Origin: Phallusia mammillata
Taxonomy: Eukaryota
DNA: 64,000 nt
Assembly: GCA_965637545.1 (NCBI GenBank)
Contig: OZ281501.1
Location: forward strand, 16,678,001-16,742,000
Direction of reading: 5' to 3'
Under the pieces are notes generated by a model. The model saw only the letters and a list, made by a program, of their open reading frames with translations. It was not told the DNA's origin and did no database searches. This document shows, in pieces, positions 2,300 to 41,828 of the stretch. How positions within the stretch are numbered: position 1 is the first letter of the stretch; each line of letters opens with the position of its first letter. The translations under genes were made by a program, and so were the position numbers.

Positions 2300-2430
2300 C
2301 ATTTTCTTTTTAAATTTGACAGTTGCTTCTGCGATCGCCGTGCGATTATTCGCCATCTGACTTAAAATAAATTGGCCTGAAGCATATGTATAGCGGTAAT
2401 AGCGAATAAAAGCACGGCGGACCACGGCTG

Positions 2431-3078
2431 TCATGGGACCGCTATATTCGCTGAAATATCTGGAGTTTGATTCGACTCGGGAAATTGATTGGATCTTGCG
2501 GCTGTAGCATCACATTCAACTTCGGCACAGCCACAATCGATCACTTCAGCGTAGTTGTGAGTTCGTGGAACGTCGTCCACACATACCATGGGATATTCCC
2601 TTGCTATTGTAGTGGTCTCCTTGCAACATTTGCAATTGCCTTAATAAAAATATCGGTGTTAGATGCAGCAGCCAATTTAAAATTGTGCGCAAACGAGCGG
2701 ACATAAAAAGTGGCAAAATGTAACATTAGTTTAAGGTGACGTTTGTACCTAAAGGCGTTTCTGTCTTGTTGTATAATTCGCTTAAACATAATATGGAAGG
2801 AAGTAAATCGGTAACACACCACAAAGTCTGCGTTTAATATTTTTGCTTTTTTATCCGATGATGTGTACTTTACACTTTCTGATTTCAAATCAAGGTAGTT
2901 TTTCTCGAACATTTCTTACCTTCCACGTCGCCGGTAAGCACGTTGTGACCTCGTATTGTAGTACAAGGGCCCTCGCAAACCGTCACCTCAACTTCATTCG
3001 GTGTCCAACAGAACTGACCTTCCAGGGTTGCGCTCAAAACAAAGGTCTTCACTCTTTTACTGCATTTATCATGGGTGC
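2431..3078 (-). CDS. Gene A C-terminal cystine knot (CTCK) and stop
   Basis: KCSKRVKTF...[19 protein letters not shown]...GNCKCCKE...PMVCVDD...[12 protein letters not shown]...TGA. Shows the CxGxC, CxCC and CxC pattern of vWF/mucin CTCK. Confidence 0.92.
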
Positions 3079-6000
3079 CTAAAATATAGAAAAATCTATT
3101 GTTAGTATTCAGTGGTTGTCAGTGTTCAGCGGTTGTTAGTGTTCAGTGGTAGAAATGCCAACAATACTGTCATATAAAAATGCTTACGATTTACCTAAAT
3201 TGCTAGTTATAAAATGCATTGGAAAGTAATGCTATTACTATACAAAATTACAACCTGTCAAAAGTTTAAGTCATTTCAAATTTATCTTATTATATGCGGC
3301 AATGATAACGAGCAATTAGGTATTTATGATGTTTTGACCCTCGGTGTAGTACAACGTTCAATTGCGCTAGTAATACACACGTATACATATATAATAGTAG
3401 AACAAACAGCTTTTCAAGCAAGATTTTCACAAAACGATTGTCTGCTTGATACAAGCATTACATCTAACAATTAGTCTAATAAGAAAATACTTACAATTAG
3501 GACAGCAGTCCACGATCTTAACCTCCCCTCCGTCCTGAAAAAAATAAGTAAATGGGAGAACTATTCACATTGTTACCTTTCAACTCCATGTACTATGTAA
3601 TTTGTTTTCATCCTTTTTGGAGCAGTTAGATGGGTCTCTTGATTATGAGATTAATTTTTAGGTAGGCTTTTAGGTTACAAGGCTGAACTTACCAGCTCGC
3701 AAAGGGTTTTATTGACGGGTTTGCAGTCATCGTACTTGTCTTTTTTAATAACTGCAGGGCAATTGGTCGCCTCATCAATGACACACTCTGCAACCTTACA
3801 ACTATCATTTTGCAATGCGAATGTCGTATTGGGCTGCAAAAAAAACATTGGATATGTACACAACTTTGCGTAGTAAACCTTTTTTACCAAATGTTACTTA
3901 CGGGAAAGACGCCGTTTTCATGAACGCACTTTTCACAGGAGCATTCGTATTTAGGACAGCAAATACCTTTCAGTGGGTTTCTCTCTACAACCTTAAAAAC
4001 AAAGACAACCAACATTACAATTTTGACATGAAATAAATGTATTGCTTATTAGTCTTAAAAAATTGTATGGATAGCTTGTGACTATGCTAACCTAGGACTG
4101 GTCTAGCGTTAGATTTAGATCCGTTTTAGTAATCCAAAGCTTACCGTTACTCGGCGGGATCCTGTAGGACAAGCAAAAGTAGTATCCCACTGTTCGCACA
4201 ACGTTTCAAGTTCCGTATCGTCTCGGCAAACACATTCTTTTTTGGGACAGCAGTCATGGGTGCCTGACAGAACACCAGCAGTTATTTCTTCCGTCAACGC
4301 GCTGCAGGTCAATGTGTAATTGGGACAGATAGTTTCAAGAACATCCACACTATTGCATTCGCAAACAAAATCATCGCAACAGCGATCTACATCAACGGAA
4401 CTCGCGACAGCAAGTTCGTACTGCAGACAGTTTTTGTTTTCATACTCGGATTGGGACAGACAACTATCTCTCGGATCTCTTGTCCTGACGGCTAAGTGGC
4501 AGGACTCCAGGTCGGATTCGTTCAGTCGCTGTGAGCTGCATTCCCAAGTTACGTTGCATCCGTTGAGTACAGTCTCAGTCCAAGTATCGTGGAGGTTTTT
4601 AACCTCACCGTTTTCTAACTCACAAACGTCACATCTGCAAACGTATTTGTTGCAGCACCCGTTTGTGGCCGGATCCTTTTCAGCCAGTTCGACTGGGAAA
4701 TGATTTTCAGGGCATTCTGGAACAGGGGTAACAGCTGTTGCATTGCAGACTATTTTGTATGTGGGGCAGCACTCTTGTCGAGGGTTTTCTGCCACTGTAG
4801 ACGGAGTGTACATCTCACATGCATTGGGTTTATCATCTGGATATTCTATGTAATCGTCTCCACAAGGGCTGCAAGTGCAGTTGTATTCTACACAACACGG
4901 TTGCGGAATACCACTAAATAACTCCACGGCATGTTTGTAGTCTTCGCATGCTTGACTTTCATATTGTTCTTTTGTTGTACATGTTTGTCGGTTTATTTCT
5001 TGAAGTTGTAAGCATACTGAGCATGCATCGTCTGAAGCCTTCAATCTGTTGTTGGAGCACAAATGCGTTCTTGTACATCCGTATTCGTCAGGAATATCGA
5101 TGTTTGAACCCCGGATTATGCGAGTGCCGTTTTGTAATGCACAACTGTCGCAACAGCACGTTTGTAAGGGGCACGTATCATTAGGCTTGCGTATGTCTAT
5201 AATTTTGTAGCCATCATCACAATTGTCCACAGTTCCTCCTCTGCATTCGCATTTGTACTCAGGGCAACATTCGTATTCACCACTGCTTTCACCCGCGTTC
5301 ACTACTATGGTGCTTCTTAAACCTGTGCAGTTCTCTGCTACCTGTTTATAGCCTGGACATTCAGCTGCAAGCACTGCCGTTTCATCACTGCAAATACACT
5401 GATAGCAGGTGTTTTCCCCGTTTGTAAAAGGGGCCGAAATATTACCAGGCTCGTTGCACTCTAGTGGTGTAGATGAATATTCCGGCTCTTTGCATACTGT
5501 AAAAAAACGAAATACCATTAAAATAGCATGTGCCTTGTACAAAGCGGTATGGTATTTGTCTGAGAATAAAATTTACAAACAAAACCACGCAGCAAACTTT
5601 TACTAAGATTCATGTTATTTTTTAATTTCTACACTGCAAATACTACGTCACATTCGACTCTAATTATCTGAATGCCTGACCAATACAACGAACATATACA
5701 TCAATGCCATCGGCTTTTTCGTTTTTTAAGTTAACGCTTGTTTTACTTAATTATTTACCTTTAATCAGTTTTTTGTATAAGACTTACCACATCTGAAAGA
5801 GTCACAGCAGTCGGAAGGATTTGTTTTGTAACTTTCAACCACTTCAAATGATGGGCAGTTTTGTGTCTGGTAGGTTGATGAAGACGGGCACGGCGGTGGT
5901 TCTGAATAAAAATCCCCACATTAACAAAAGAGGATTACAATTTGTGTTTGTGTCATGTAGGTTAAACTCACCGCAGTAATCTTCTACGCAGCAAGGGTTC

Positions 6001-9000
6001 GGGTCGATTTGAGTCAAGTTGTATGTCACTTCCATTCGAGTATCACAGGAGCCGCAGTCTTTCGGCGGAGGACAGATCGCATCGAGTTGTGTTCCGTTGA
6101 AACATCTTACGCTGTCGTCCCGTTTCTTTTCATTACTAAGCACGCATGTATAGTTCTGATTACAACCACTGTTGTCTAACTCTGACCATATGTCGCTTTC
6201 AAGATGTAAACCATCGTTGCCATCCTGACAAGAGTTACAAACACAACCTGAAGTAATAGGGTCATGACAACCGCAACTGTCCTTCATATTGTTGTATATA
6301 TAACCGGTAGGACACGTTGATTCGACTATTGTGTCATTGCATTTGCTTTCGCAATTGTATACAGGACAACACGGTCCGTAGGAAGATATCTCTTTTGATG
6401 CCACTGGAACGTTGCAGAACCCACAGTTCAGTAAAGCGTTACTGTAACTGGGGCACGCAAGTTTTAGAAGCTCGGTGTTATCTGTGCAGTTGCATTCCAG
6501 ACAGGGACATTCTTCAGTGGTGTTGCAACCTTGGACGACTTTTTCGCCAGGATAAGAGCAAAAGACCGTGTCAGGTTCGTCGCATGCTGCATGGAAAAAA
6601 ATATTTGCCAGTTCCTGTTTTAACGTTTAAATCATTAACAAACAGCAATTTGATAATGGTGGAATAAGTCAAAGATGCCTACTGTATGATGATTAAAATA
6701 GAATAGTAAAACATACCGGCGAATAAATCGCATGACTATTAAATGTTTACAGACCAGCTGTGAGGAACAGTTACTTTGCTAAATGCATGTAATGCAGTAA
6801 TGTCTGAAACGACATAGGATATTCATTTACTACTTAGGTTTTGGAAATTTACAAATAAATTGCAAAGCGCTTACTGCATATGTATTCTTGACAGCATACG
6901 CCCGATCTATCAACCGGCATTGCGTACGACCCGGTCCGGTTACAATATTTATCCTCATACTGTTGCTGGGTCAAACACGTTGTTGCCTCTTCATACTCTG
7001 TCCTCAACTCATGACATGAATACTCGTCACCGATTCGTGTGTGTAAGCAACGAACACGAATGTCACAGTGATCGATTTGGTTCTTCAAAGTAACGTTTTC
7101 ACCCGGATTAAACCTTCGAACTTCACCGTTAAAAGTACCCTGACAGGTATAACAAATACACTTCCAGTCCTTGCAACAATCAGTAGGTTCGCTCATGTCA
7201 ACAGCTTCATAATGGGGAGGACATTCTGGCCTTGTTTGGGTGTAGCAACGGTCACAATCACATGACCATGTAGGGCAACATGGATTTGGGCCAGTTCCAG
7301 GGGCGTCATGAATTTTGACCACAGAGCGGTCATCTCTTGAAGAGCAGTTTGCCTCAGCTTCAGAGTAACTCTCACATTCAGTTTCAAGAACGGAAATTTC
7401 TGTGTCGCATTCGCAAACAGGTTTTTTAAAGCATCGGGAATCAGGATTATCGACTGAGTCGCTGTACTGGCCAGGATTGTTACATTCCTTGGGTTGAGGA
7501 GCGAAGGATGCATTGCAATCTAAACACACATAAAATTATAATATTTAAAACAGCCATGCATTTGAGAATCGGTAAAAACACTTCTGCAAGGATAAAACTT
7601 AAATTGTTGTGAGAAGAAAGTTTTGATGGAAACAACTAGCCAACATCACATTAAAAATATTTCAAATTCGTAAAGAATAATATTGTTACATAACATCATA
7701 AATGTGGCTTGCATGATATTTTCTGGGTGAGTTTTATCATGCAAACACCCCGAAAATCCATTTCAGCACAAATTGAACAGCGTGTGTCATCTAATACTTA
7801 CTGCAGGTGTAGTTAACACAGCATGTATTTCCTGAAGGAGATTCTATCAGATATTCATCAGCAAAGCAATCATCAAACTCTTCTTTAGTAGGGCAATCAT
7901 CTCGTGTATTGTGTGTGGTTCGTACAACACCACATGAGTTGGTATGTCGCTCAGGACCGCACACGTAATGCACAACACACCCATCTTCCACCTCTTGCCA
8001 CAATGAACCAAACTAAAAAGTCGAAATAATACGGTTATTTTGCTTTAACGTCCGATTAACAACATTTAATCTTAAGCCAAAATTACAAAAGTCTCTGTTT
8101 TGGTTTGGTTAACCGTACCAAAGCTCAATTAAGTCTGGTTAATAAATGTAACCAGTTCTGTACATTTGCTGAAGATACTGTTTTTCACTGTCTACTCATT
8201 TTGTTTGATTTTTACTTTTGTTGATTTTAAACGACTGTTTTTGAAATTTCTTTCGGAGGTTTTCTTATATAACATAGTTGCCCACGAATGATTTACAGCC
8301 ACCGACCTTCTAAATCAAGGGGATAGTTTGTGTTTTACCTTGAACAGGTTTATCTAAAAGTGACTGTTTTCTACAGATTTTAATTTAATACGTTTGTTTT
8401 TTATACTTATTCTTCCACTTACCGGTTTAACGGTTCCGTCAGGTAGGAAACAGTCGTAACACACCGAAGTGTTACAGCAATTCTCTTCAACCAAAACGTA
8501 GCCTTCTTTTTCTTCAACAGGCGGGCAGGGAATTATTGAAGGTTCGTAACATCCGTCTTCAAGTGGTAAGGGTTTATTTATAATATCGCACTCATAATTT
8601 GTGCAACCATTGCCATCACTATTCGTCTCATTCCATTTGCCGATAAAAGGCCAATGGCGATTTCCAGTGTTATCCTTACAGGAGTAACATGTGCAGAATT
8701 GGTAAGTACAACCACATTCATCATCGTCATAAGCGGGAACAAATCCGTGCGGGCAATCGAATGTTTCAATTTCTGGGCAGAATTCTTTTGGTATGCAAAT
8801 GCAGTCATAATTTGGACAGCATTGGCCTTCCACATGTTCGATAGTGATTTCCTTCATGGAATTGTTCTGGCACTTTTCCCATGCTGTTTGATATCCAGGA
8901 CAAACGTTTTTGTATTCTTCAGAATCGTTTAAGCAAACGCAGTCATAAATTGGACAACACTGGCCTTCTACATGTCTAATAGTGAATTCCTTGATGGAAG

Positions 9001-12000
9001 TGTTCTTGCACTTGTCCCATTTCTCTTGATATCCAGGACAAACGTTTTTGTATTCTTCAGTATCATTTAAGCAAACGCATTTGGAATGAGCGCACACAGA
9101 ACCTTCAGGAGGAACAACGATAGACTTCCAACTACGAGAACATTCGATCGGAGGTGGTACATAGTCGGAATTGCAAACTGCAAAATGTTTTTAAAATGTT
9201 ATGAAAACTTTACAAAACGAGCCCGGATTACGAGAAAACACTCACTCACATACATATATATATAAGTGATAAATGCGGAAAATATTACATCGACTTTTTG
9301 TCGTGTTTACACGTATGTGTTTGATAGTTTTAACATTTTGTACTAAAGTTAGGCAGAAATAAATACACAAATTCGTCCTTGCAACTTAGGAATAACATTA
9401 ATATAAAATGCGACAAAAAGACCCACCACACGTGTAGTTTGAGCAACACGGGTCGGTTGAATCAACTTCAATTAATGTTTGATCTTCTTTGCATTTGTAT
9501 TCTGTACAATTGCTTCTTGGATTGTAAAATTCCTCAAGTATGTAACAGAAGTCTGGGCTTGTGTATTTTTTATCTGAACAAACGTGCTTCACCATACATC
9601 CACCTTCGTCGGGAATCGAAATAATACCGCCACGCTGAACAATAAAAACACCACCGATTATCACTGGTGAAAACGGTAACTTTTTTGTTTTACCGCCTTG
9701 AAGGCGATTTTTTAACAAGACCTAATGGAAGGCATTTTAATGTGGGTGACGCAAAAACAAATGTAATTTGTGTTTTCAAAAAGTACTATTCAATCACATA
9801 TCAAATAGTTTAAGGGGTATGTCTTCCTTGGCTCTCAAAACCTACCAAACTAATCTTTATTGCTGGTTATACTGGTTATCGATGTATCTACTATTTAAAA
9901 GTAAACGCTGGGTTGCGTTGGTTTCAAAAACCTTTTTGAGCTTTAATTAAGTGTTTAATCAAAAGGCACTTCATTATTACTTATGGCAAAAACAAGCGTT
10001 TCTGGCAGGGCATATCGTACCTCAATCTTCTCTTCCTCCCAGAAGCATGCGTCACATGTCACATTAGCACAACACATATTGTTGTCCCAAACCAGTTTGT
10101 AGCCATCAGGAACGCTGGTTACGTTGTAGTCCGGATCACAAGGTGTTGTCACACACTGGTATACATTACAGCAGCCGTGGCACTGGTCGTGAATCGATTT
10201 CGAGCCGTTTGCGACGGTGGTGTAATGCTGACACTTGCCACACTTCGGCGGTTCAGGACAGAGGTTAGGATTACATTTGCACTCGCTCTGTATTGGGCAT
10301 GCACAAAAGTCCTGCTGGGTTACTGTAAAAACGAAAGCAATGGTTATAAATTATAAATAATGTTTACTGTACTATTATTGGTCATAGGTGATGGGTGAAA
10401 AATGCAACAACAGAACTGGGTTTACACAAGCAAACAGACCCTTTGCATCATTTTTAATTTTATAACCGCAACTTGAACATAACTAACCACACACCTTCAA
10501 CATGGCATCCAAGGTACTCCGTGCAGTTTGCATAGCTGTGGTCTGTATGGTTGCAGCCGTCAGGACAGATACAATCCGGGCACTCTACTCCTTCCATGTA
10601 CACAAGAAATTCTTCGGGACAATATTTGATGTCGGTGTAGATGCAAGTGCAGTTTTCTTCGGGACAGCATGTTTCGTTTGGTCTCGTGTAGTTGTTTTTG
10701 GTTCCAAGTCCCCCACAAATCAGTGGAGTACAGGAATCACACTCTAAAGCATAAAAAAACAAGGACAAATCCTGGTAAAATATGCTTAAACAAAAATAGT
10801 TGTATTAAAAACAATAAAACGGCAACATAATATACTTACAAAAAACAAAACGTTTCAAGTAAAACAGTGGGTTAAGTGATATGCAAACGTGCAATTAGTG
10901 TAAAATTCAACTAAATGCAAAATAGGGTAAAAGTAACCTTGTCATATGTTTTTAATCTTATTACATGTAAAAACACTTACCGCATGTGTAATCTTGACAA
11001 CATTTGCCGGTGCTATCCTTTTCTACTGCGTAAGATCCCTCCAGGTAACAGTGCTGTTTCTCAAACTCCTGCTTAGTCAGACACGTCGCTTCCTCTCGAT
11101 ATTCTGTTTCTATCTCGAAGCACGAATACCCGTCGTTTCTGAGTCGTGTGTGCAAGCAACGAACTCGTACGTCGCAGTTATTGCTTCGGCTCGTCAAAGT
11201 AACGTTTTCACCCGGATTAAGCCTATGAACTTCACCGTTAAAAGTCGTCTGACATGTATAGCAAACACACTTCCAGTCCTTGCAGCAATCAGAAGGTTTG
11301 CTCATATCAACAGCTTCATAATGGGGAGGACATTCTGGTCTTTCTTGGTTGGAGCAAGTGTCACACTCACATGACCATGTAGGGCAACATGGGTTTGGGC
11401 CAGATCCAGGGGCGTCATGAATTTTGGACACAGAGCGGTCATCTCTTGAAGAGCAGTTTGCCTCAGCTTCAGAGTAACTCTCACATTCAGTTTGAAGTAC
11501 TAAAATTTCTGTGTCGCATACGCAAACAGGTTCTTCGTAACATTTGTAGTTAGGAATCTTAACTGTATCGTTGTACTGGCCTGGAGCGTTGCATTCGATG
11601 GGTTGAGGGGCAAGGGATGCGTTGCAACCTTAAAAGTACAAAAAAATGCGTATGACCATATTGTGTCACGCTGACAAGTATAATTTAAAGAGTTTCTCCA
11701 AAATCTGATTACTAAAAATGTGAGTGTTGATATGTATAAAAACTACTGTAAAAAATAATTTTTGAAAATGCTGGAGAATGTGCACCAAAAAACTTTAGCT
11801 GGTATTCGAAAGTAATAAGTTAGTTTTCCAGTCACTTACTGCAAGTGTAGTTAACACAACATGTATTCCCTGAAGGAGATTCTTCAAGATATTCATCAGC
11901 ATAGCAGTCATCAAACTCTTCTTTAGTAGGGCAATCGTCTCGTGTATTGTGTGTGGTTCGTACAACACCACATGAGTTGGTATGTCGCTCAGGGCCACAC

Positions 12001-33000: not shown

Positions 33001-36000
33001 ATAGACTTGTTATTATCCGGTTAACCGGATAGCTAAATTCAAAATATCCGTATATATCCGTTATCCGGATAGTGGAAATTATTGATATCCGAACCAACCC
33101 TAGTCTCAACTGACGCCGACTTATTTTTACCCACCTCCTTCGGAAAAGAGCGTGCAGGCATCGTACGGCGTCGAAGTTGGATCGACGTCTGCACATGTAG
33201 CTGGGTATTTCCACGAGTTGCCGAAGACAATCGGAGTTCCTTCGAGTCCGTTTTTGCAGTGAAAATCGTCAGTTGTCAAAGAATTGTACGTTCCAACCAG
33301 GCCACACATATGGTCTAAACGGAAAAGAATGTTCTAAGAATAATTAAGTAGCAACCGGGGCCATGAAGTGAAATTACTGTCTACCAGTTGTGACAAAAAC
33401 GTGCTTAACTCTCTGCTGTAAAGAAAAACATACTGTGAAATTAAAATCTGTCCTCTAAACCTTCGGTGTATAAAACATGATGAGTTTATTCATCATAATA
33501 TTGAAGTGACAAACAAAATTTATCCATGTCGACTGCTGGTTTCCACTTTTGCAGAATAAAAGCCGATTTTTACGCTGAAGTTTACTACTTACTTTTGTAT
33601 TTTTCTGGCACAGTGAGTACAAGAGTCGATCGTTGATCCCATACAAGTTTAACTTGGGTGTCTCGGATTGCCACTTCAATATACTCGGATGACAGTTTGC
33701 GTACTGAAAGATCACCTAAAACAAACAACTATAAGTCCGGGTCTAAACTTTCAAGCATTTCTCCTGGGAAAGTATAAACTAACTTTACATCAAAAATTAT
33801 AACAAACAAAGCAATATTGTAAAACACATGGTGCTAATTAAAAATCCTATTTACTACACCCCGATTTATTTTTTTCAGCGAACTCTTTTTTTGTTGTTAG
33901 GTTAACCAAAACTTTGACCAAAAACTCTTACTTTCAGCTACTTTTTGCACTCAAAATTTAAAAGCAACTTAATGCATTTCCTGTGAGGAATTATGTGGAA
34001 GCAATTTTTTGAAGCTGTTATACTTGAATTTTTTACCGTTGTTTGTTGGCAGCGTGACGTGCATGTGGTTCTGAATCACAACTTCCCCGTCTTGACCAAG
34101 AATCACATAAAGATTCGTTTCAGGCAGAATGATTTGAACGCGCCTAAAACAGTTTCTGTCAGTATAGGTAGACTCCACATACATAACCCTTGATCATTTT
34201 GTCCTATTTATAATGTTGAACATCAACCAAGCCCAGCTTTCAGTCGGATTTTCCGAACAACTTTGCTAAATTATGACTGCTTGTAAACACACATTAATCA
34301 GTATTTGTGATTCGGCTTAGGGATGGTTAGAGTTAATAATTACAAAGGGCATTTTGGGTGGAGCCACTTGTTTGACTTTGTCCTGTAAACAAGTTTGAAA
34401 ACAATGACAGCAGCCTATGCGAGTTTTGGCTGATAGGAAACCCTTACGAACCTGACGCATGAAAACATAGAGCTTGTACCGCAATGTTCAACCGTGATGA
34501 AAATAGAAAAGTCTGAAGTCGTCGCCCGACAATGCTCAGCAAATAGATACTGGCACGTGGTTCCAGGAAAGTCAAACCAATTTCCGTCCAAAGTTCGAAA
34601 GTGACCAAAACCATTGACAATTGCAACTCCTAAATTAAAAAAAAACGTTGGAAATAGTACTTTAGGTGTGACTTTGCCATGCGATAAACTGGCAATGTCT
34701 GTTAAAATATCATAACACATCAATTTAATTTGGTAAGAGCGTCAGCATTTACACCTTCTACTGTGTGAGCTTTTATTGTTCACCTCTAAAAGTATTTTAA
34801 AATTCTAAAAAAATTCAATTGTTTTAACGTACCCATGATTGGAAGTAATTCGACAACTTTCCACATTCCACCAGTGCATTCACTGAAAATATATCATTAA
34901 GGAAAAGCATTTATGAAACCAAAAGATGTACAAAGGGCACAGTAAGGGTTTATTGTTATCCGTAGAAAAGACTTACAGCCTCTTGTTGGCTTGTATACAG
35001 TATTCTCCTACGTTGTACTTCTCACCCTCGTACGTACAGGGACATGCTTCTTTTTGTACACACCAAGATCCAGACCAAAATGTGTCTGGAAATTAAAAAC
35101 ACACACAACGCGAATTCTATCTATTGTACTTCTTACACAAGCGCCCTGAACTGCTTCATTGACAGGTGTGTTTGTTTACTTTTATGTGTTTGTTTACTTG
35201 TTTTTGTTCATGTTCCAAGCCGTTGGACACTTAAACAATTCAAGGTTCTACGGGTTTGAGTTGTACTATTTGGCTTATTCTGACTGCTCTTTTAAAAAAT
35301 GTGTTATTAGCTACGTTTACACAAACGTTAACATTTTGTATTTAGATAACTCAAAACATTTCACAAACTGCATCAAAAACTTGTTATTTTTAGTTTAAAA
35401 CTCAGGCTTTTTATTTATAACTTTTGAAATGTATATCTTGGGTAAAATAATCGCACATTCACACAGAAGGATTATGGCATAGCTGCATTTTTACCTCTAG
35501 GACATTCACATCCCTCATTGCATGATTTTTCACAGTATCCTGTTCCAAAATTTTCACACGATTCTGGACAACTACTCGCACACTCTGAGAAAACTTGATT
35601 GCTGGGACATGTACGCTCTATAAAGACGAAACAAGCTTAAATCCAGAAACCAAAAATAACTAATAGTGATAAACAAGCTTAAATATATTTTGACTTATTG
35701 TATTAATATTTGGTGCAAATGCCAAACAGTTTTTTTCCGTTATCCTGAAAATCATTTATTATGTAGCTTTACAAACCTTAACAGTTATAAAACTTTAGTT
35801 TAATATATCAAAGATTATAGCACAACCAAAGTTGTTAAACGATATTCATTTTGGATTTACAGAAAAGGATGGGAATTTACCAGAAATTGTAGTTTTCCAT
35901 ACTTTAAATCAACTTACTGCATGACGTTTCAGTTCTCCAGTCTCCCACGTGACCACCTTCAGCCACGCAAGTACGGGCGTACTTTGACACCACCGCGCAA

Positions 36001-39000
36001 TGGCAGTCCTCTCTTTCCATGTACTGACATTTGCACAAATCAAACATGCATTGTTTGTGGGCCCTGGCAGTGTCAAAGGTTTGTCGGCAATCTTCAAAGG
36101 CGCTCGATAGGAAGACGTTGCAAATAGATTCTATTTCCTGACAGAAAAAATGGAAACCCATTATTTTGCAGCGTTTGCGCAATATTTTAAGGCGACCTAA
36201 AACAGGTTTAACCTTTACTTGCAAGTGAAAACGGTAAGTATTGGATTAGGTTGTACAGCGCCAGATACACAATCTTTTAGAAAAAGTGGGGGACCCTTTG
36301 GCGTTTATTGGTGATGTTAGACTTAATAAGACGATAAAGCGCTTTCAGGTGCCTAAAGATTAGTCTAAAATGTCTAGGAAAATCTGTCCATGTTTCGATC
36401 TAAACTTGCTAAACGTAACATTGCCTTTTAAATCTTACAAAAAAATGGACAAAATCAAGTCAAATGTGTCTTACTGGAGTGGAATGATTTGAACACTTTC
36501 CATCGATGTCATTTGGAGTAGTGCAAACTTCCCCTCTGTCTTCAACTACCAAATATTGCAACAGCGATTGCATTGTAAACCTTTCGATTTCTAGAAAAAC
36601 AAACATAGTTTTACTGTTAAAAAGAAGTCATCATGTTTGCTGGATTGAATGGACAAATCGGCTGTGCCGTACAATGATGCCTGAACTTGTTTGTACTATT
36701 TTTAACACTTTATCGTTATGTCAACACACATCTTATTTGAAAAATAAACTGGTTAAAAACTGGATGAAAAATATTAATGAAGATTATTTAAACTAATTTT
36801 TTATTTGAATACTGGATTTAACACTTTTCGAAAAACGTCATCATGTTTTGTAGATATTTAAAACTTGCAAGGATGTTTATTTTTTAAAAAGTTGTATTAG
36901 TTTGGTGTTTTTACATGCAAAATTTATTTATTAAATAACTAGTTCTTTTTTATTTCTTTTTTTATTTTTTTACCTGTAGTATTACTAGAACCATGTAATT
37001 CATACTTTCCACAAAGACCTTCCAATTTTCCGGCCACACTCTCATCCGGTTTAAAGAAAATTGAGAAGTGTTGTTTGTCGATTTCCAACACGTGGTCATC
37101 AAACATTACGTAAATGTAATGGTCGTTTTCGGTAATCATATAATGGTTGTAGAAGGCTGGGAGGTCCGCACTGGTGTCATTAAAAGCTCGTTTATATTAC
37201 AACAATACAAAACTTAATGCCAAAAATACTAAAATAAAAAGTATATATACCAAGAAACTATGCTAAAAGTTTAATTTAATAAAACACGGAACATGTTTAA
37301 TACTTTGGTAAAATATGTTCATATATGTGGGAGGACTTCAATAGGTTTTTATTCACATTAGGTAAACTATTAGCTTTAAACTATTTCGAATCGAATCTAA
37401 TGAATTTATTTGTTATTTATTTGTATGTGTTTTTTATTGAAGTGAGCAGTGTAACGTACTTGTCGATGATCATTTTGTAAAAATTGTAAAAATGTGATGC
37501 TAAAAAAAGAACAAAAAATCGGTCGATGTAAAAATTAGGAACATATATTTCGCCTAAAATTTTCATCGTCAGTTTATTATTCAAAAAGCATTTCTTTGTG
37601 TCATACCGGTAACCTCCGGTAAAAACTTCTCCATGTTCCGTAATCAATACTTGGTCGCCGACTCCTTCACTGATTGACACATGGGCTACACATGAAGTAG
37701 CGGTGTCCGCACACTCCTTGTGCATTCGTACGAGAATCTGCCACAAAAATAAAGCACTTTAATTGTAAACACTGCGTTAGTACGTAGCGTACAGTCAGTA
37801 TTGTAGCTGCCCTATCCGATTTTCCGACGTCTCACTCACGGCGCCTTTAACAGGGTCTTAACCTTGGTGAAGACGCCCCGAATGAGACGTCAAAACGCCG
37901 CTCGGAGTCAAATATAATTGCCGCTTAATCAAAGGGGCAGTTTATGAATGATGCCTGGCAACAAGACAACATAAGTATTGTACTGTTAACGCGACGTTTT
38001 TGAATCTTAAAATTAATGAATAATCATTTTTCATGATTTCCAATCGACGCAAGTTTTGTACTCACTTCGAAAGATCCATCCGTAACCATATCAACGGTTT
38101 TTGACAGTATGTACTGGCATGTGCCATAGAAATCATACGTTTCACCGCTGAAAGTCTCGCCGTGACCCAAACCATATAAGGAACACTCTCTTTTGCTACT
38201 AGGGATGTTTGATGCAAACAAAATTGAGTCGCTAAATTCACCATGCGAAGCTGTAATACAAAACATAAAAAATGACGAAACTATTGTTTCATGGTTAATG
38301 CAAATTACTTACTGTATGAACATCGATATCCAAGATAGCTTGGTGAGCAGGCACAATATTCCAAACCAGCGCATGTTCCTTGGTTGTAACAGAATTTATC
38401 ACCGCCTGTGCAGTTCGCTGTAACACAACAACTATTGCAAGATGGAATTTGATTTGACTTACGTGGTTAACCTTTCAGATGTGAAATCTGACCGCTTAAG
38501 ACCTCAAAAAATGCTGCGATTACAAACATAATAATAATAATAAAACTATGAACAAATTATACCTAAATGCCAAATTTTTGTGTGGGAAGTGAATTTAGAT
38601 GGACAAGCAAATCATGACTAATTAACTTCTATTTGTTGTTTAGAGTAAAAAAAATTTAATAAACAGAAAAATTTTAATAGAAAGAAATAATAACACATAA
38701 CCTTGTTTAACTATTTCGTCCACATTTTAAAATACAACTCACGAGTCAACTTGATTTCGTAGTTGATCAAAAATCCATCACCAGCAATAGCGGAATCAGA
38801 TACAAACTGCACAGTCGCTTTACTTTCTGTTGTTTCTATCATCTGCCCTTTGTAAAGTTGCATTCCGCATAGTTTGTTCTGCCACATGCGTACACCCGAA
38901 ATCCGCAGATAATCGTCACTGTGAGTTAAAACACAAAAAAGGTTACAGAATATTGTTTGGTGCCAATCCGTAAAGGATTTGTAATCGTAAAGTACCCAAA

Positions 39001-40037
39001 ATAATAAAACATTGTAATGTATGTGCACAATTTGGGAGTCACGGACTGTTCAAATTGTACCTGGGAGCGCATTTTGGTGAAAAAATGAAATACCCAAACC
39101 TATTAAATTAGCGCCATGATAAATCTTGAGTTGTAATATAGTGGTCGGCAACCCTTGTACTGCGGAATGTTTTTGAAACTGAAGTTTTATCGCGGACCGG
39201 CGTTCAAAAAACTACAAATATTCAGCAACGAAAACGCCTAAATTAGTTCATCATTCCCGTGACACATGGGCAAAATGTTTAAAAGGATTTAACCTAAAAA
39301 AGTATACGGCCCGGTAACCAACTCCTCGCGGACCGGCACCGGGCCGTGGCCCGGCGGTTGCCGACCAGATATAGTTGCAATGATTTTTATTTTATTGGAT
39401 GCCGATTCGCGACGATACCTGGTTCGTAGCGCGAAACATTTGGCCGACTTTTGTGTACAACACAAATACTACCGCGTTCGCATGACAACTCCACACAAAA
39501 ATAATCGACAACGGCGTATACTTGTTGGTTTAACTTGCTCCTATTTTACCTGCACTCTGGTGATGACTGGAGTTCAAAGTCATCTACATTTAAAACGATA
39601 GTGTGTCCTACAGGAGCAACGATGGTCCAAGTACAATTGGCATTGCTGGAATATTGAGCAGGGTAGTTGGGTGATGCGATCCTCCCTGAAGGTTTCGTTA
39701 ATGTTCCCCCGCAGGCTGTAAGATAAACAAAAGTCGCATAAATGTTAAAAGCCTAGCTCCAGGCAATTCCCCATTTACACGTGTTGATTAGTTGCTTATT
39801 GTGCTATTTTTTATTTGAGTTATTTGGTAGAAGTACGCACCGAAAATAAATCCACAAGCTTTCTTTACGCGTTTGTCCTAATTGCAAATTGCAGTTGACC
39901 ATTCATACGCCACACTCTTAAGCTGTGTTAAACTAATTTAGCAAAAAATACCAACAAATACCAACGAACCTACCAAACTGCGCTTGAGCTTGCTTAGACA
40001 CAAAGAAAAGCATCACAGCCCAACGCAGGAACCACAT
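2431..40037 (-). CDS. Gene A: complete multi-exon gene for a giant (~4,730 aa) secreted vWF/gel-forming-mucin-like protein (SP-CUB-EGF-D1-D2-D'-D3-Cys-rich-D4-Cys-rich stalk-CTCK)
   Basis: 68 exons with GT-AG sites and matching phases; summed CDS is 14,187 nt, divisible by 3. Exons 5'->3': 39974-40037, 39550-39715, 38743-38918, 38313-38417, 38066-38250, 37607-37737, 36974-37170, 36475-36590, 35918-36137, 35495-35617, 34977-35085, 34833-34882, 34452-34629, 34037-34143, 33593-33715, 33135-33314, 31689-31904, 30449-30577, 29974-30085, 29114-29154, 26872-27006, 26477-26603, 25771-26026, 25144-25353, 24778-25011, 24552-24708, 24347-24482, 23822-23919, 23461-23678, 23081-23257, 22669-22852, 22098-22322, 21439-21629, 20752-20835, 20301-20478, 19564-19788, 18988-19175, 18423-18527, 17850-17978, 17509-17651, 17160-17307, 16652-16838, 16224-16347, 15632-15752, 15391-15423, 15145-15343, 14790-14958, 14296-14464, 13923-14019, 13622-13801, 13002-13094, 12335-12924, 11840-12050, 10981-11628, 10495-10743, 10021-10322, 9427-9634, 8423-9177, 7802-8012, 6875-7519, 5972-6586, 5788-5901, 4145-5496, 3902-3991, 3693-3833, 3495-3534, 2920-3078, 2431-2639. 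Individual boundaries are hand-called. Confidence 0.9.
3495..13094 (-). CDS. Gene A C-terminal Cys-rich repeat stalk (~2,100 aa, vWC-like and CC..Y.C.C units, many N-glycosylation sequons)
   Basis: Large exons (590-1352 nt) match the provided Cys-rich ORFs, e.g. 4115-5542, 5844-6404, 6849-7529, 8354-9097. There is an internal duplication of a three-exon module: 12335-12924/11840-12050/10981-11628 versus 8423-9177/7802-8012/6875-7519. Confidence 0.85.
8804..9079 (-). repeat. Intra-exonic 138-nt (46-aa) tandem duplication in gene A
   Basis: [46 protein letters not shown] followed by [46 protein letters not shown]. Confidence 0.9.
13330..13530 (-). mobile_element. Degenerate tRNA-derived SINE-like element (homologous copy at ~54420-54600 in gene B)
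   Basis: Minus strand has an A-box-like TGGCCTATGGGTTAATGCG and a B-box-like GGCTCAAATTCC (GGTTCAAATCCC in the B copy), followed by a non-tRNA body. No cloverleaf can be built. Confidence 0.4.
13622..16347 (-). CDS. Gene A D4 assembly (VWD with GDPH, C8-like, TIL)
   Basis: [28 protein letters not shown]...TVGLCGTC. TIL: [20 protein letters not shown]...[11 protein letters not shown]...CVPIEC. Confidence 0.88.
16091..16135 (-). ncRNA. Penelope-type minimal hammerhead-ribozyme-like motif (probably degenerate)
   Basis: Minus strand reads CTGATGA-A-GGTGTTTC-GTAT-GGGACATC-GAAAC-GTT: both catalytic boxes, an 8-bp stem II and a palindromic ACGT stem III. Stem I pairing is weak. Confidence 0.5.
16652..23678 (-). 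CDS. Gene A central Cys-rich region (two 4-exon modules plus VWC-like units), occupying the position of the vWF A1-A3 or mucin PTS region
   Basis: 14 exons, mostly CC..Y/F.C.C repeats. Exons 22669-22852, 22098-22322 and 21439-21629 are homologous to 20301-20478, 19564-19788 and 18988-19175 (225-nt exon length shared). A VWC-like unit [17 protein letters not shown]...CCPEYECP lies at 16652-16838. Confidence 0.8.
17048..17079 (+). ncRNA. Second, more degenerate hammerhead-like motif
   Basis: CTGATGA-TGGGATGAGCATTTGCC-GAAACGTT. Stem II is imperfect and stem I is not evident. Confidence 0.35.
21751..21912. repeat. ~30-bp intronic minisatellite (4-5 degenerate units; about 2 units in gene B at ~62617-62665)
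   Basis: Recurrent AGGTTAACCTAAGAAAAGTTCACATAC. Confidence 0.7.
23822..26026 (-). CDS. Gene A D3 assembly (VWD-C8-TIL)
   Basis: [23 protein letters not shown]...[16 protein letters not shown]...FGNSWK...[28 protein letters not shown]...[10 protein letters not shown]...KCLWRYEP...EGCYPHC closely follows the vWF/MUC2 D3 pattern. Confidence 0.9.
26477..27006 (-). CDS. Gene A D' (TIL'-E')
   Basis: [23 protein letters not shown]...[37 protein letters not shown]. This is a TIL plus E module without a VWD, lying between D2 and D3 as in vWF and mucins. Confidence 0.82.
29114..34629 (-). CDS. Gene A D2 assembly (VWD-C8-TIL-E)
   Basis: VWD: [26 protein letters not shown]...WDQRSTL...MCGLVGTYN...FGNSWK. 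C8: [12 protein letters not shown]...CKQDACGC...[13 protein letters not shown]...[12 protein letters not shown]: CPEGQTYKA...CGRTCRS...VEGCTCDDG. Confidence 0.88.
29300..29814. mobile_element. Non-autonomous hAT-type DNA transposon (MITE), ~515 bp, in a gene A intron
   Basis: Perfect 15-bp TIR CAGGGGTTCCCAACC / GGTTGGGAACCCCTG. 8-bp flanks CTGTAAGA / CTGTAAGC (7/8 TSD). No transposase ORF. Confidence 0.85.
32463..33102. mobile_element. Non-autonomous hAT (Ac-like TAGGG termini) element, 640 bp, in a gene A intron
   Basis: Termini TAGGATTG / CAACCCTA. Perfect 8-bp TSD GTCTCAAC at 32455-32462 and 33103-33110. Many subterminal CCGGTTAACC and TATCCG repeats at both ends. Confidence 0.88.
34833..38250 (-). 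CDS. Gene A D1 assembly (VWD-C8-TIL-E)
   Basis: VWD: [29 protein letters not shown]...EGLCGKY. C8: [13 protein letters not shown]...CMFDLC...[13 protein letters not shown]...WRTETSC. TIL: [18 protein letters not shown]...CNEGCECP. E: [13 protein letters not shown]. Confidence 0.88.
38313..38417 (-). CDS. Gene A EGF-like domain (phase 1-1 exon)
   Basis: [34 protein letters not shown] has the six-Cys EGF pattern ending in CxC..Y.G.RC. Confidence 0.85.
38743..39715 (-). CDS. Gene A CUB domain (2 exons)
   Basis: [64 protein letters not shown]...KLCG...[22 protein letters not shown]. Canonical CUB motifs present: CGG, SPNYP, CxWxI, C..DYL, FxSD, GF..Y. Confidence 0.92.
39139..39370. mobile_element. 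Degenerate hAT (Charlie-like) MITE in a gene A intron within the CUB domain
   Basis: TGGTCGGCAACC / GGTTGCCGACCA inverted ends with a GC-rich CGCGGACCGGC subterminal motif. No clean TSD found. Confidence 0.6.
39974..40037 (-). CDS. Gene A exon 1: signal peptide
   Basis: Translates to [21 protein letters not shown]: hydrophobic core and an AQA cleavage-like motif. Phase-1 donor GTAGGT joins in frame to the CUB exon. Confidence 0.8.
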
Positions 40038-41687
40038 AACGTTTGCTGAGTTTAACTCTGTAGCAATGACAAGAATTTCGCGCGCTACTGACAAAAGCCA
40101 AAATGCACTGATGCCGTTCAGTGGAGGTGCACCCGTTTAAGTACATAGAGCCGTTGTCAATCTACGCCCCAATCAAGGAAAACAGGATAGCAATATACCA
40201 CTGTTATTTACATAGTATGTGCCATTTATATCTGTGATTAGGAAGCATTTTGTAAATACACATTGTTCGTGCTCACTACATAAAATTTGTACTTGGGGCT
40301 ACTGTCAATGTTGTTTTCCAAAAATATAAGAGACAATTACAAATCAAGCAAAACTGAAATGACAAGCATTCCACCTCACACGTCTACGGTATATTAAGTG
40401 TTCCAATGTCAAAACATTGACTAAAAGCCAACTCACTTTTTTATTTCGGTTTCACATTTTCTACAACGATTGTAAATTTGATAAGCCCATAAGAACTAGA
40501 CCGGAACCCTGAAGCTCACCTAAGCATGACGCCGTACAAAGGAGGTAGACTAAACAGCACATTGCATTTTCAGCTGAAACATGTCATTTCATAATCTAAA
40601 TTTTCTGTCATTTTAGTGATTTTTCTGCATGGTTTTGCAATCAAATTTGGCGCCATAACGGCTTGTTTTTTTTAGGAAATCCGCGACAGTGCGGCAGTTT
40701 ATTTGTTAATTTTTTATGAATGGGTGTAAAAAGCGTTTCTTTTAAGAAAGTAATTATCCGCTTTCAACATATTTGCTTCTTTTATTGTTTCGTAAAATTT
40801 AGACTCCTTGTAAAAAATTAAGATGGTAATTGCGATGGAGTTCCCCAAGATTATTTAATGCATGAAGTGTTCCGTGGCCCCCAAAAGATTAAAAAACACT
40901 GCCCTATAGGTTGATCGCAACCATATATGAAACATTTTTATGTCTCTTTTGTCTTTAGCTCATAAACTTGCCAGACCGAAACAGGCTGATAAAACTATAG
41001 ACTCTACAAGCAACAACCTTGTTATCGACAAAGTAAAAATGACAAAGCTTTTTATATGTGCAAGCACAGGGTGATAAATGCATTGTTGTGTGAAAACCAG
41101 CGACAAGGAACAAACCGCCAAAGCGCAAAGCGTTAGAATTCGGATGAATTGGATGAAATGAAGTCGACTGCGTATTGCACATTTACTCCCGGTTTATCAA
41201 TTTGGCATAGAAATGATAATGAGTCTGTACAAAAATCTGTTAGCATGCGATGACACCAAATTAATGAAAAAGTCAGAGGCGGACAATACGACTTTAAAGC
41301 GCAATCAGAGGCGGACAAGACAACAAAAGACAGACAACTTGTTTGTGGTTTTTAGGTCTGGTTTGGTTAACAAGCAATATTAAACTGATACGAACGACTT
41401 TCTGGCATGTTTCGTTCTTGTTTAAAGCTTTATTGCACTAATGTTTCGTTCTTGTGGTTCAAAAAAGACATAAACAGTTCGTTCTTCGAGACCTTCTAAT
41501 CATGCATTGAAAACAGTGTGCTTAATGCAATAAAGCTTTAAACAAGACACAAAAATCAGATTATTGACATTGATTAAAACAACGATTGAGTCTTTGAGCG
41601 AATAAAACAAGCGCATCACTAATGGACGGAATATCAGAAGCAACTGTCCAAAAAGTTTTCCAACCTACACCATAAAGTTAGCTGTAG

Positions 41688-41693
41688 TTTATT
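41688..41693 (-). promoter_or_regulatory. Putative polyadenylation signal of gene B
   Basis: Homologous AATAAA downstream of the gene B stop. Confidence 0.55.
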
Positions 41694-41828
41694 CATTTTC
41701 TGTCAAATTTTAAAGGACAGTTGCTTCTGCGATCGCCGTGCGATTATCCGCCATCTGACTTAAAATAAATTGGCCTGAAGCATATGTATAGCGGTAATAG
41801 CGAATAAAAGCACGGCGGACCACGGCTG

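What the first reader, a model, noticed from the sequence alone, without database searches (positions are those of the whole stretch)
2431..40037. Giant CUB-EGF-capped vWF/mucin polymer scaffold with no PTS and no VWA domains
Seen: the spliced ~4,730-aa product keeps the full polymerisation skeleton (D1-D2-D'-D3 ... D4 ... CTCK). The D3-D4 interval and the D4-CTCK stalk consist entirely of Cys-rich repeats, and a CUB plus EGF precede D1. Known: vWF has A1-A3 between D3 and D4; MUC2/5AC/5B have PTS there; otogelin has an N-terminal EGF but no CUB; SCO-spondin and hemolectin carry LDLa/TSP1/discoidin domains not seen here. Inference: a disulfide-polymerising, N-glycosylated fibrous protein (mucus net, adhesive or defence matrix) whose CUB supplies a binding function. 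It may be an undescribed subfamily, although related vWF-like ascidian endostyle proteins exist and could turn out to be orthologs.
Basis: partly seen in the sequence, partly recalled or inferred. Interest (0 to 1): 0.78.

Follow-up and report, generated by a model that had tools for sequence, protein, structure and literature searches.

The report
Giant CUB-capped vWF-like polymer gene
This is an intact sea-squirt gene for a roughly 4,700-residue secreted protein built like von Willebrand factor or a gel-forming mucin, but with cysteine-rich rod modules where the sugar-coated or platelet-binding middle would be and a CUB-EGF cap at its tip; it is an interesting variant of a known kind, and what it does in the animal has not been shown.

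Summary
On the minus strand, from the ATG at 40037 to the stop ending at 2431, 67 GT-AG exons join in frame. They give a 4,726-aa product: signal peptide, CUB, EGF, D1, D2, D'D3, about 810 aa of Cys-rich modules, D4, about 2,090 aa of Cys-rich modules, then CTCK.

- No VWA, PTS, TSP1 or furin site was found.
- The D3 cysteines that make the intermolecular bonds in VWF and MUC2 have aligned counterparts, and the CTCK aligns with that of MUC2. The CGLC motifs of D1 and D2 are degenerate.
- Pfam and PDB sequence searches do not recognise the rod modules. A predicted fold looks weakly like VWC/FnI.
- Four tandem paralogs all keep the order CUB-EGF-D1. The twin gene B adds two TSP1 repeats, which this scan had already noted on neighbouring DNA (s1-411001).
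- A versus B gives dN/dS of 0.28.
- Public relatives are fragmentary models only: a Phallusia protein named "Notch 1-like" and a Clavelina LOC gene split into three models.
- There is no RNA evidence and no cross-species evidence for the cap.

Verdict: a real gene and a new variant of the vWF/mucin polymer scaffold. Its function is inferred.

The parts
39974..40037 (-). Exon 1: ATG and signal peptide (21 codons plus 1 base; GTAGGT donor; phase-1 intron)
   Evidence: Read directly from the sequence; in frame with the CUB exon. The same signal peptide is seen in gene B.
38743..39715 (-). CUB domain on two exons (39715-39550 and 38918-38743), bounded by phase-1 introns
   Evidence: Pfam CUB E 2.8e-16 and 0.005. 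Conserved in paralogs B, C and D at 87, 54 and 46% identity for the first exon.
38313..38417 (-). EGF-like module: one exon with phase-1 introns on both sides
   Evidence: Six-Cys EGF spacing. Pfam EGF_2 reaches only E 0.71. 11 of 13 weak PDB hits are EGF modules. Conserved in B, C and D.
34833..38250 (-). D1 assembly (VWD1, C8-1, TIL-1, E-1), exons 5-12
   Evidence: Pfam VWD, C8 (E 1.3e-16) and TIL (E 6.5e-9). The C8-1 exon hits FCGBP, MUC2, MUC5B and VWF. The CGLC position reads EGLCG.
29114..34629 (-). D2 assembly (VWD2, C8-2, TIL-2, E-2), exons 13-20; no furin site follows it
   Evidence: Pfam VWD, C8 (E 3.2e-18) and TIL. The CGLC position reads CGLVG. No Rx[KR]R motif anywhere in the protein.
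26477..27006 (-). D' (TIL'-E'), exons 21-22
   Evidence: It lies between E-2 and VWD3. Half-TIL Pfam hit, E 2.5e-4. Conserved in C and D.
23461..26026 (-). D3 assembly (VWD3, C8-3, TIL-3 and a following Cys module), exons 23-29; exon 29 is the least certain
   Evidence: The VWD3 exon aligns to VWF 852-915, MUC2 823-905 and MUC5B 853-930. The C8-3 exon aligns to MUC2 1046-1097 and VWF 1075-1126 and keeps the extra Cys. The TIL-3 exon aligns to VWF 1141-1174. The CGLCG motif is intact.
16625..23257 (-). D3-D4 interval: about 740 aa of Cys-rich modules on exons 30-42 (14.5% Cys over residues 1351-2163, which also take in exon 29 of the D3 part), including a duplicated four-exon cassette
   Evidence: No Pfam family. 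VWC-like Cys pattern, 13 CCx(3-5)C motifs and 23 sequons. Conserved in C and D.
13622..16347 (-). D4 assembly (VWD4, C8-4, TIL-4), exons 43-49
   Evidence: Pfam VWD E 2.5e-10 and 1e-4, C8 0.007, TIL 1.1e-6.
3495..13094 (-). D4-CTCK stalk: about 2,090 aa of Cys-rich modules on exons 50-65, with large exons of 590-1,352 nt
   Evidence: No Pfam hit and no PDB sequence hit. AF2 models with pLDDT 79 and 83.5. Weak FnI/VWC fold matches, Z 4.0-4.4. Ten invariant Cys across 13 module copies.
2431..3078 (-). C-terminal cystine knot (exons 66-67), a short tail and the stop codon
   Evidence: The last exon aligns to the MUC2 knot, 7qcu 746-794, E 0.005, and weakly to the VWF CK. 11 Cys. CxGxC and CxC motifs are visible.

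Best explanation
An intact, selectively maintained tunicate gene encodes a secreted protein of about 4,726 aa. Its order is signal peptide, CUB, EGF, D1, D2, D'D3, about 13 Cys-rich modules, D4, about 28 Cys-rich modules, then CTCK.

Shown: the gene model, the domain order, the absence of VWA, PTS, TSP1 and furin sites, and conservation of the D3 and CTCK cysteines.

Inferred:
- Monomers dimerise tail to tail through the 11-Cys cystine knot.
- Dimers then link head to head through the two D3 cysteines that do this in VWF and MUC2. This gives disulfide-bonded filaments or nets.
- The spacers are long, N-glycosylated rods of divergent VWC-like modules rather than O-glycosylated PTS or VWA domains.
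- D1-D2 stay attached, as in mucins.
- The N-terminal CUB-EGF cap sits at the head-to-head nodes and supplies a ligand-binding or cross-linking site. The paralogs vary this cap.
For: Gene model:
- 67 GT-AG exons, no internal stop, 4,726 aa.
- The first four introns have phases 1, 2, 1, 1, so CUB and EGF are each bounded by phase-1 introns. The first D1 exon has no start codon or signal peptide of its own.

Domains:
- Identified by Pfam exon by exon.
- D3 and C8-3 exons align best to the D3 copies of VWF, MUC2, MUC5B and MUC5AC.
- Aligned counterparts of VWF C1099 and C1142 are present and conserved in paralogs A-D.
- The CTCK aligns to that of MUC2 and has 11 Cys.

Cap and selection:
- Four tandem paralogs keep CUB-CUB-EGF-VWD1 in the same order, at 31-87% identity.
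- A versus B gives dN/dS 0.28 over 4,267 codons.

Composition:
- 91 N-glycosylation sequons against 38.7 +/- 5.7 in shuffles.
- No S/T/P-rich frame, no VWA match among those scored in the cluster, and no TSP1 motif in gene A.

Stalk modules:
- AF2 pLDDT 83.5. The top structural matches are FnI fingers, VWF C4 and CCN3/Col2A VWC domains.

Other species:
- Clavelina has a collinear D2-D3-stalk-CTCK locus.
Against: - There is no transcript evidence. The four runs guessed to be RNA covered only an intronic repeat at 39155-39340 and gave no exon or splice joint.
- No other species shows the cap. The metagenome scan with the CUB exon found only unrelated multi-CUB loci, and the Clavelina locus stops inside D2.
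- The vicinal CGLC motifs that human VWF has in D1 and D2 are degenerate here, EGLCG and CGLVG, in all four paralogs. From my own knowledge these motifs are needed for VWF multimerisation, so head-to-head bonding may be less efficient or catalysed in another way.
- The C1142-equivalent alignment is weak (E 0.083).
- Every fold match for the stalk module has Z below 5 and a Foldseek E of 0.047 or worse.
- The cap evolves faster than the rest of the protein (dN/dS 0.62 over 146 codons).
- A few exon boundaries are uncertain: exons 12 and 20, and exon 29 especially.
Confidence: 0.62

Rival explanations
1. The CUB and EGF exons belong to a separate short transcript (signal peptide, CUB, EGF, about 175 aa), or are used only alternatively. 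The large D1...CTCK protein would then start elsewhere.
For: There is no RNA evidence either way. If the EGF exon's donor is not used, the frame closes after three more codons, so a short secreted product is possible. The cap shows weaker constraint, dN/dS 0.62.
Against: The first D1 exon starts at a consensus acceptor in phase 1 and has no ATG-initiated signal peptide of its own. All four junctions from exon 1 to exon 5 have consensus sites and matching phases. The same order and spacing is kept in four paralogs down to 31-46% identity. In gene B two TSP1 exons were added upstream of the CUB behind the same signal peptide.
Confidence: 0.1
2. It is not a polymer. It is a monomeric or only CTCK-dimeric extracellular binding protein, for example a VWC-rich modulator of growth factors like kielin/chordin-like protein or BMPER, or an adhesive.
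For: The CGLC motifs of D1 and D2 are degenerate in all paralogs. The stalk is made of dozens of VWC-like modules, and from my own knowledge VWC is the BMP-binding module of chordin-family proteins.
Against: The two D3 cysteines that are free for intermolecular bonds in VWF and MUC2 are retained in all four paralogs, while the C8-1 and C8-2 copies lack the extra Cys. The complete D1-D2-D'D3 ... D4 ... CTCK order is that of the polymerising proteins. From my own knowledge, BMPER-type proteins have one VWD and no CTCK.
Confidence: 0.17
3. It is an ordinary gel-forming mucin or VWF ortholog whose PTS or VWA exons were missed by the gene model.
For: The model was built with a home-made exon chainer and curated by hand. 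Exon 29 and a few small exons are uncertain. The VWA scan scored only 150 of 484 candidates.
Against: No minus-strand open frame of 30 aa or more in 2000-41000 is S/T/P-rich. Between D3 and D4 the introns are all under 0.8 kb, and the open frames there that are not Cys-rich exons look like intron or overlap exons in other frames. No listed VWA match lies within 130 kb. The frame closes perfectly without any further exon. The Clavelina homolog likewise goes from D3 straight into Pfam-invisible stalk modules.
Confidence: 0.04
4. It is a decaying duplicate (pseudogene) in a recently amplified cluster.
For: A and B are young duplicates whose introns are 70-100% identical, with patches of 100% identity.
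Against: The 14,181-nt frame across 67 exons has no stop or frameshift. dN/dS is 0.28 over 4,267 codons and is below 0.5 in each of the four large regions.
Confidence: 0.04

Closest known systems
Human von Willebrand factor (D1-D2-D'-D3-A1-A2-A3-D4-C1..C6-CK)
   Same: The order of the four D assemblies, D' and the CTCK. The D3 CGLCG motif and the cysteines aligned to C1099 and C1142. A stalk of VWC-type modules between D4 and CK.
   Different: No A domains. No furin site after D2. CGLC is degenerate in D1 and D2. The stalk is about four times longer, and a second run of Cys-rich modules replaces A1-A3. A CUB-EGF cap precedes D1.
Gel-forming mucins (MUC2, MUC5AC, MUC5B)
   Same: D1-D2-D'D3 ... 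CTCK. The propeptide-like D1-D2 is probably not cleaved off. C8-3 is most similar to that of MUC2 (57.8 bits), and the CTCK aligns to that of MUC2.
   Different: No PTS domain and no CysD; by definition mucins carry at least one PTS domain (Lang et al. 2006, PMC1552070). Glycosylation is predicted to be N-linked: 91 sequons.
Tunicate relatives: Clavelina lepadiformis LOC143464528 with its two upstream gene models, and the Phallusia mammillata protein named 'Neurogenic locus notch homolog protein 1-like'
   Same: The same Pfam-invisible Cys-rich stalk modules ending in a CTCK. In Clavelina, D2 and D'D3 lie directly upstream on the same strand.
   Different: Only 24-27% identical to this gene over the stalk and CTCK (up to 38% in short stretches), so they are distant paralogs or orthologs. 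The public models are truncated or split into three. It could not be checked whether a CUB-EGF cap precedes their D1.
Ci-GFM1 of Ciona (gut chitin-membrane gel-forming mucin, 2,880 aa; PMC6109156) and the 17 multi-VWD proteins of Ciona intestinalis (PMC4948705)
   Same: Tunicate expansions of the D1-D2-D'D3-D4-VWC-CK scaffold with lineage-specific inserted modules.
   Different: As the paper describes it, Ci-GFM1 has chitin-binding and FN2 domains and a small PTS. It has no CUB-EGF cap and no giant Cys-rich stalk.
SCO-spondin, otogelin, FCGBP
   Same: Repeated VWD-C8-TIL units. SCO-spondin and otogelin end in a CTCK. FCGBP gives the highest summed sequence scores for the VWD and C8 exons.
   Different: The marks that Lang 2016 lists for these families (LDLa for SCO-spondin, AbfB for otogelin) were not seen in any exon scanned, nor was TSP1. 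From my own knowledge FCGBP has 12-13 VWD units and no CTCK. The neighbouring gene B does carry two TSP1 repeats.

Membership tests
von Willebrand factor | D1-D2-D'-D3 ... D4 ... CTCK order | tested here: met
   Pfam exon by exon, plus positional alignment to VWF D3 and the CK.
von Willebrand factor | Three VWA (A1-A3) domains between D3 and D4 | tested here: not met
   Of the 150 VWA matches listed for the genome, none lies in the cluster (150 of 484 candidates were scored). Every exon between D3 and D4 is a Cys-rich module.
von Willebrand factor | Furin-cleaved propeptide with CGLC in D1 and D2 | tested here: not met
   No Rx[KR]R motif. D1 reads EGLCG and D2 reads CGLVG, whereas human VWF has CGLCG at 158 and 520.
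von Willebrand factor / gel-forming mucins | D3 cysteines that form the intermolecular disulfides (VWF C1099 and C1142) | tested here: met
   C8-3 reads GGDCECFC and aligns to the VWF stretch whose Cys is Ala in the mutant construct 7kwo. TIL-3 has C-L-W-R-Y aligned to VWF 1142-1146, though weakly (E 0.083). Both are conserved in paralogs A-D.
Gel-forming mucins | At least one PTS (Pro/Thr/Ser-rich, O-glycosylated) domain | tested here: not met
   No S/T/P-rich frame on the gene strand. The richest 50-aa window has 21 S+T+P and contains cysteines.
Gel-forming mucins | CysD (Mucin2_WxxW) domains | tested here: not met
   No such Pfam hit in any scanned exon. The test was exon by exon only; the joined protein was not scanned.
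Otogelin / otogelin-like | AbfB domain (Lang 2016, PMC4948705) | tested here: not met
   No AbfB hit in any scanned exon (same Pfam calls). Exon-by-exon test only.
SCO-spondin | LDLa (the mark Lang 2016 lists) and many TSP1 repeats (my own knowledge) | tested here: not met
   A TSP1 motif search over the 184-kb cluster finds two copies, both in gene B. No LDLa or TSP_1 hit at threshold in the exons of gene A; one weak TSR hit, E 0.029, at 3430-3564.
VWC (von Willebrand C) module, for the stalk units | Ten-Cys two-subdomain fold: an FnI-like SD1 plus an SD2 ending in CCxxC | tested here: inconclusive
   Ten invariant Cys, with a CCx4C ending. For the AF2 model, CCN3 VWC gives Z 4.0 (69 of 70 residues aligned), VWF C4 Z 4.1 and tPA/FnI fingers Z 4.3-4.4. 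All are below Z 5, the best Foldseek E is 0.047, and Pfam VWC does not hit. The classical CxxCxC motif is replaced by Cx4-5C.
Tunicate Cys-rich stalk family (Clavelina LOC143464528, Phallusia 'Notch 1-like') | Long runs of the same Pfam-invisible modules ending in a CTCK, downstream of D assemblies | tested here: met
   Local BLAST gives 24-38% identity over the stalk and CTCK. No Pfam hits in those proteins. The Clavelina locus is collinear, D2-D3-stalk.

The most novel reading that the evidence does not exclude
This four-gene cluster may encode the structural filaments of a tunicate-specific secreted mesh, most attractively the pharyngeal mucous feeding net made by the endostyle. The filaments would be non-mucin polymers: rigid N-glycosylated rods of VWC-like modules joined tail to tail (CTCK) and head to head (D3). 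Interchangeable N-terminal caps would set the cross-linking or particle-binding chemistry at the nodes: CUB-EGF in genes A, C and D, and TSP1-TSP1-CUB-EGF in gene B. If so, rod length and node type could be read directly from the gene.
Probability: 0.15. Interest if true: 0.75.

Novelty: new variant of a known kind. Interest (0 to 1): 0.47.

Why it matters
The vWF/mucin scaffold is the animal kingdom's standard way of making disulfide-bonded extracellular polymers. Its variants differ in what is put between the polymerising ends: VWA domains for platelets and collagen, PTS domains for hydrated gels.

Here the insert is more than 2,900 aa of a divergent, database-invisible Cys-rich module, and a CUB-EGF cap is added to the polymerising head. 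That predicts a stiff filament that is not a gel. The gene sits in a small, rapidly evolving tandem family whose caps differ.

The finding also shows that public tunicate annotations truncate, split or misname these genes ("Notch 1-like"). It gives a concrete candidate for the unknown protein basis of tunicate secreted nets, tunic matrices or adhesives.

It could also test whether D3-mediated multimerisation can proceed without the CGLC motifs of D1 and D2.

Tried and rejected
1. RNA support. The look-up of sequencing runs found four small runs guessed to be RNA, each holding 0.14-0.15 of the words. Laid on 34900-40700, they covered only an intronic repeat (39155-39340) and gave no exon and no joint.

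2. Pfam on the large stalk exons gave no family. PDB sequence searches on exons 57 and 62 gave nothing.

3. The exhaustive representative search with the 485-aa open frame around exon 62 found only 8 hits. One is an ankyrin false positive (P0008), and none is full length.

4. The metagenome scan with the four-paralog CUB alignment returned 18 loci. All are multi-CUB genes or short contigs, and none has EGF plus VWD downstream.

5. Environmental contigs carrying stalk homologs (L023, L043) have no D assemblies within the 10 kb upstream. Walking further was abandoned.

6. In the Clavelina locus L042, the upstream models stop inside D2. The spliced upstream protein has no reference, so it could not be looked up.

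7. Literature searches for a published CUB-EGF-4xVWD-CTCK architecture or for ascidian 'VWFL' genes found nothing relevant in the held library.

8. My first two automatic gene models (4,392 aa and 5,009 aa) were rejected. One missed exons and the other over-extended them.

9. The joined spliced protein was never sent to a search tool: no Pfam or InterPro scan, word search or fold prediction of the whole product.

Full report
**What is there**

The Cys-rich open frames of the region all lie on the minus strand. A second, very similar series starts at about 41.8 kb. I built the exon chain with a codon-usage and splice-site dynamic programme. I then added conservation against two diverged paralogs and curated by hand.

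The final model has 67 exons, all with GT-AG introns. The ATG is at 40037, the stop ends at 2431, and the CDS is 14,181 nt, giving 4,726 aa with no internal stop. A few boundaries remain uncertain: exons 12 and 20, and above all exon 29.

The joined protein was used only inside scripts. All database searches were done exon by exon, by reference.

**Domains**

Exon-by-exon Pfam scans gave:

| Domain | Position | Pfam result |
|---|---|---|
| CUB, exon 1 of 2 | 39715-39550 | E 2.8e-16 |
| CUB, exon 2 of 2 | 38918-38743 | E 0.005 |
| VWD x4 | starts at 38.3, 34.7, 26.0 and 16.4 kb | hits |
| C8 x4 | | best E 3e-18 |
| TIL | in D1, D2, D' (half), D4 | hits |

- **EGF exon (38417-38313).** It is below Pfam's threshold (E 0.71). 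It has the six-Cys EGF spacing with the Y-x-G-x-x-C motif and is conserved in all four paralogs. Of its 13 weak PDB hits, 11 are EGF modules.
- **CTCK.** The last two exons carry an 11-Cys cystine knot. The final exon aligns to the MUC2 C-terminal knot (7qcu 746-794, E 0.005) and weakly to the VWF CK.
- **D3.** The VWD exon at 26 kb aligns best to the D3 copy of VWF (852-915), MUC2 (823-905) and MUC5B (853-930). The C8 exon after it aligns to MUC2 1046-1097 and VWF 1075-1126. The numbering D1, D2, D'D3, D4 therefore rests on position as well as on domain names.

**What is absent**

- No open frame of 30 aa or more on the gene strand is S/T/P-rich. The richest 50-aa window has 21 S+T+P and contains cysteines.
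- A six-frame VWA scan of the whole 240-Mb assembly lists 150 matches. None is in the cluster, and the nearest is 134 kb away on the other strand. Only 150 of 484 candidates were scored.
- The introns between D3 and D4 are all under 0.8 kb and hold no plausible extra exon.
- TSP1 motifs occur twice in the 184-kb cluster, both in gene B.
- There is no Rx[KR]R site anywhere in the protein.

**The Cys-rich regions**

Residues 1351-2163 (D3 to D4) are 14.5% Cys, and residues 2518-4605 (D4 to CTCK) are 13.1% Cys. Together they hold 41 CCx(3-5)C motifs and 73 of the 91 N-glycosylation sequons. Shuffled sequences give 38.7 +/- 5.7 sequons.

Pfam and PDB sequence searches do not recognise these regions. 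The exhaustive search of 1.84 billion representatives, run with the 485-aa open frame around exon 62, found only eight hits. The best is 36% identical. One is a 187-aa Ciona savignyi fragment.

An alignment of 13 module copies has ten invariant cysteines and ends in CCx4C. The AF2 models are locally confident: pLDDT 79 for the 450-aa exon and 83.5 for one 110-aa module. The structural matches are dominated by:
- fibronectin type I and tPA fingers (Z 4.3-4.4);
- VWF C4 (Z 4.1);
- CCN3 VWC (Z 4.0, 69 of 70 residues aligned);
- collagen IIA VWC and VWF C6;
- NELL2.

All are below Z 5, and the best Foldseek E is 0.047. I read the modules as divergent VWC-type units, with moderate confidence only.

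**Is the cap part of the gene?**

No RNA evidence could be obtained. The case therefore rests on the sequence.

1. The junctions from exon 1 to exon 5 have consensus sites (GTAGGT, GTAAAA, GTGAGT, GTAAGT) and phases 1, 2, 1, 1. CUB and EGF are each flanked by phase-1 introns, the usual mark of shuffled modules.
2. The first D1 exon has neither a start codon nor a signal peptide of its own.
3. Four tandem genes on the same strand all keep CUB-CUB-EGF-VWD1 within 1.2-1.6 kb. Identity to A runs from 87% (B) down to 31-54% (C, D). In window coordinates the genes are D (-1.8 to -49.5 kb), A, B (82.5 to 41.8 kb) and C (130 to 87 kb).

Gene B has in addition two TSP1 repeats between the same signal peptide and the CUB.

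A and B are recent duplicates with conserved introns. They nevertheless show dN/dS of 0.28 over 4,267 codons, and 0.23-0.41 in each of the four large regions. The cap alone gives 0.62 over 146 codons.

**Mechanism**

The tail has the 11-Cys knot that dimerises VWF and the mucins.

In D3, the C8-3 exon reads GGDCECFC. It aligns to the VWF stretch whose second Cys is Ala in the C1099A/C1142A construct 7kwo. The C8-1 and C8-2 copies of this protein lack that cysteine. The TIL-3 exon starts with C-L-W-R-Y aligned to VWF C1142-E-W-R-Y, but only weakly (E 0.083). Both positions are conserved in all four paralogs. Tail-to-tail plus head-to-head disulfide polymerisation is therefore the best-supported reading.

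Against a strictly VWF-like route, human VWF has CGLCG in D1, D2 and D3. Here only D3 keeps it. D1 reads EGLCG and D2 reads CGLVG in the whole family. With no furin site, D1-D2 and the cap would stay on the mature protein, as in mucins.

What the cap binds, and where the protein is made, is inference only.

**Relatives and novelty**

Word searches seeded with the longest environmental homolog (P0012) and then with the Clavelina protein (P0019) return only three other long proteins with this stalk:
- a Phallusia mammillata protein of 2,427 aa, named "Neurogenic locus notch homolog protein 1-like";
- Clavelina lepadiformis LOC143464528, 3,613 aa;
- an environmental protein.

None has a Pfam hit. 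The two named tunicate proteins end in stalk plus CTCK.

In the Clavelina genome, two gene models with VWD, C8 and TIL lie directly upstream on the same strand. They map to D2 and D'D3 of this gene. One gene has therefore been split into three in the public annotation. Its D1 and any cap lie beyond the fetched locus.

Identity levels (49% or less to any named protein) say the window comes from another tunicate.

The literature held here records 17 multi-VWD proteins in Ciona intestinalis (PMC4948705) and the chitin-binding Ci-GFM1 (PMC6109156). I found no description of this architecture.

The gene fails the defining tests for VWF (no VWA), for mucins (no PTS), for otogelin (no AbfB) and for SCO-spondin (no LDLa or TSP1). 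I class it as a new variant of the vWF/mucin polymer scaffold and a member of a poorly annotated tunicate family.

**Verdict**

Interest is moderate.

Noticed in passing
Outside the window: G000:C8:16759308-16760600; locus L002 2037-2796, minus strand (window-equivalent about 81.9-82.5 kb): The twin gene B has two TSP1 repeats (W-x-x-W-x-x-W-S-P-C-S-x-T-C-G) between the shared signal peptide and the CUB. In gene A the corresponding intron is only 258 nt. So A lost, or B gained, about 870 nt carrying two modules after a recent duplication.
   Followed up: partly
G000:C8:16628001-16812000 (window -50 kb to +134 kb): Four tandem paralogs lie on the minus strand (D, A, B, C), each about 38-48 kb with the same overall layout. 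A and B also share their introns (70-100% identity), with patches of 100% identity (for example window 24532-25119 and 2365-3118) that suggest gene conversion.
   Followed up: partly
window 39155-39340 (intron between the two CUB exons): A short repeat is present in many contigs of the small runs X1-X3 at summed depths of about 57-159. It looks like a dispersed, perhaps transcribed, mobile element, and it is the only part of 34900-40700 that those runs cover.
   Followed up: no
window 1554-1781 and 40955-41182 (minus strand), with their surroundings 1500-2300 and 40950-41700: The intergenic stretches upstream of gene D and gene A share a conserved block that contains a 75-aa ATG-started open frame. 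It could be a shared promoter or 5' region, or a repeat carried along by the tandem duplication.
   Followed up: no
Public proteins P0018 (Phallusia mammillata) and P0019 (Clavelina lepadiformis LOC143464528); locus L042: The public annotation of this family is unreliable. The Phallusia model is an N-terminally truncated stalk plus CTCK that has been named 'Notch 1-like'. The Clavelina gene is split into three models of 564, 797 and 3,613 aa.
   Followed up: partly
Environmental contigs L043, L044, L045 (ERZ27241786, ERZ27241799, JGI 3300027611); protein P0012: A single uninterrupted open frame of 2,211 aa (6.6 kb) is made of the same Cys-rich modules. It is 46% identical to the Phallusia protein and sits in marine metagenome contigs, so tunicate DNA with a giant stalk exon is present in these 'metagenomes'. 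No D assemblies lie within 10 kb upstream.
   Followed up: partly
window 20301-22852 versus 18988-20835 (exons 31-34 and 35-37), and 10981-12924 versus 6875-9177: The stalk grew by duplication of multi-exon cassettes inside the gene. Examples are the exon pairs 52/58 and 53/59, and the similar exons 51 and 57. This matches earlier first-reader notes on this window.
   Followed up: no
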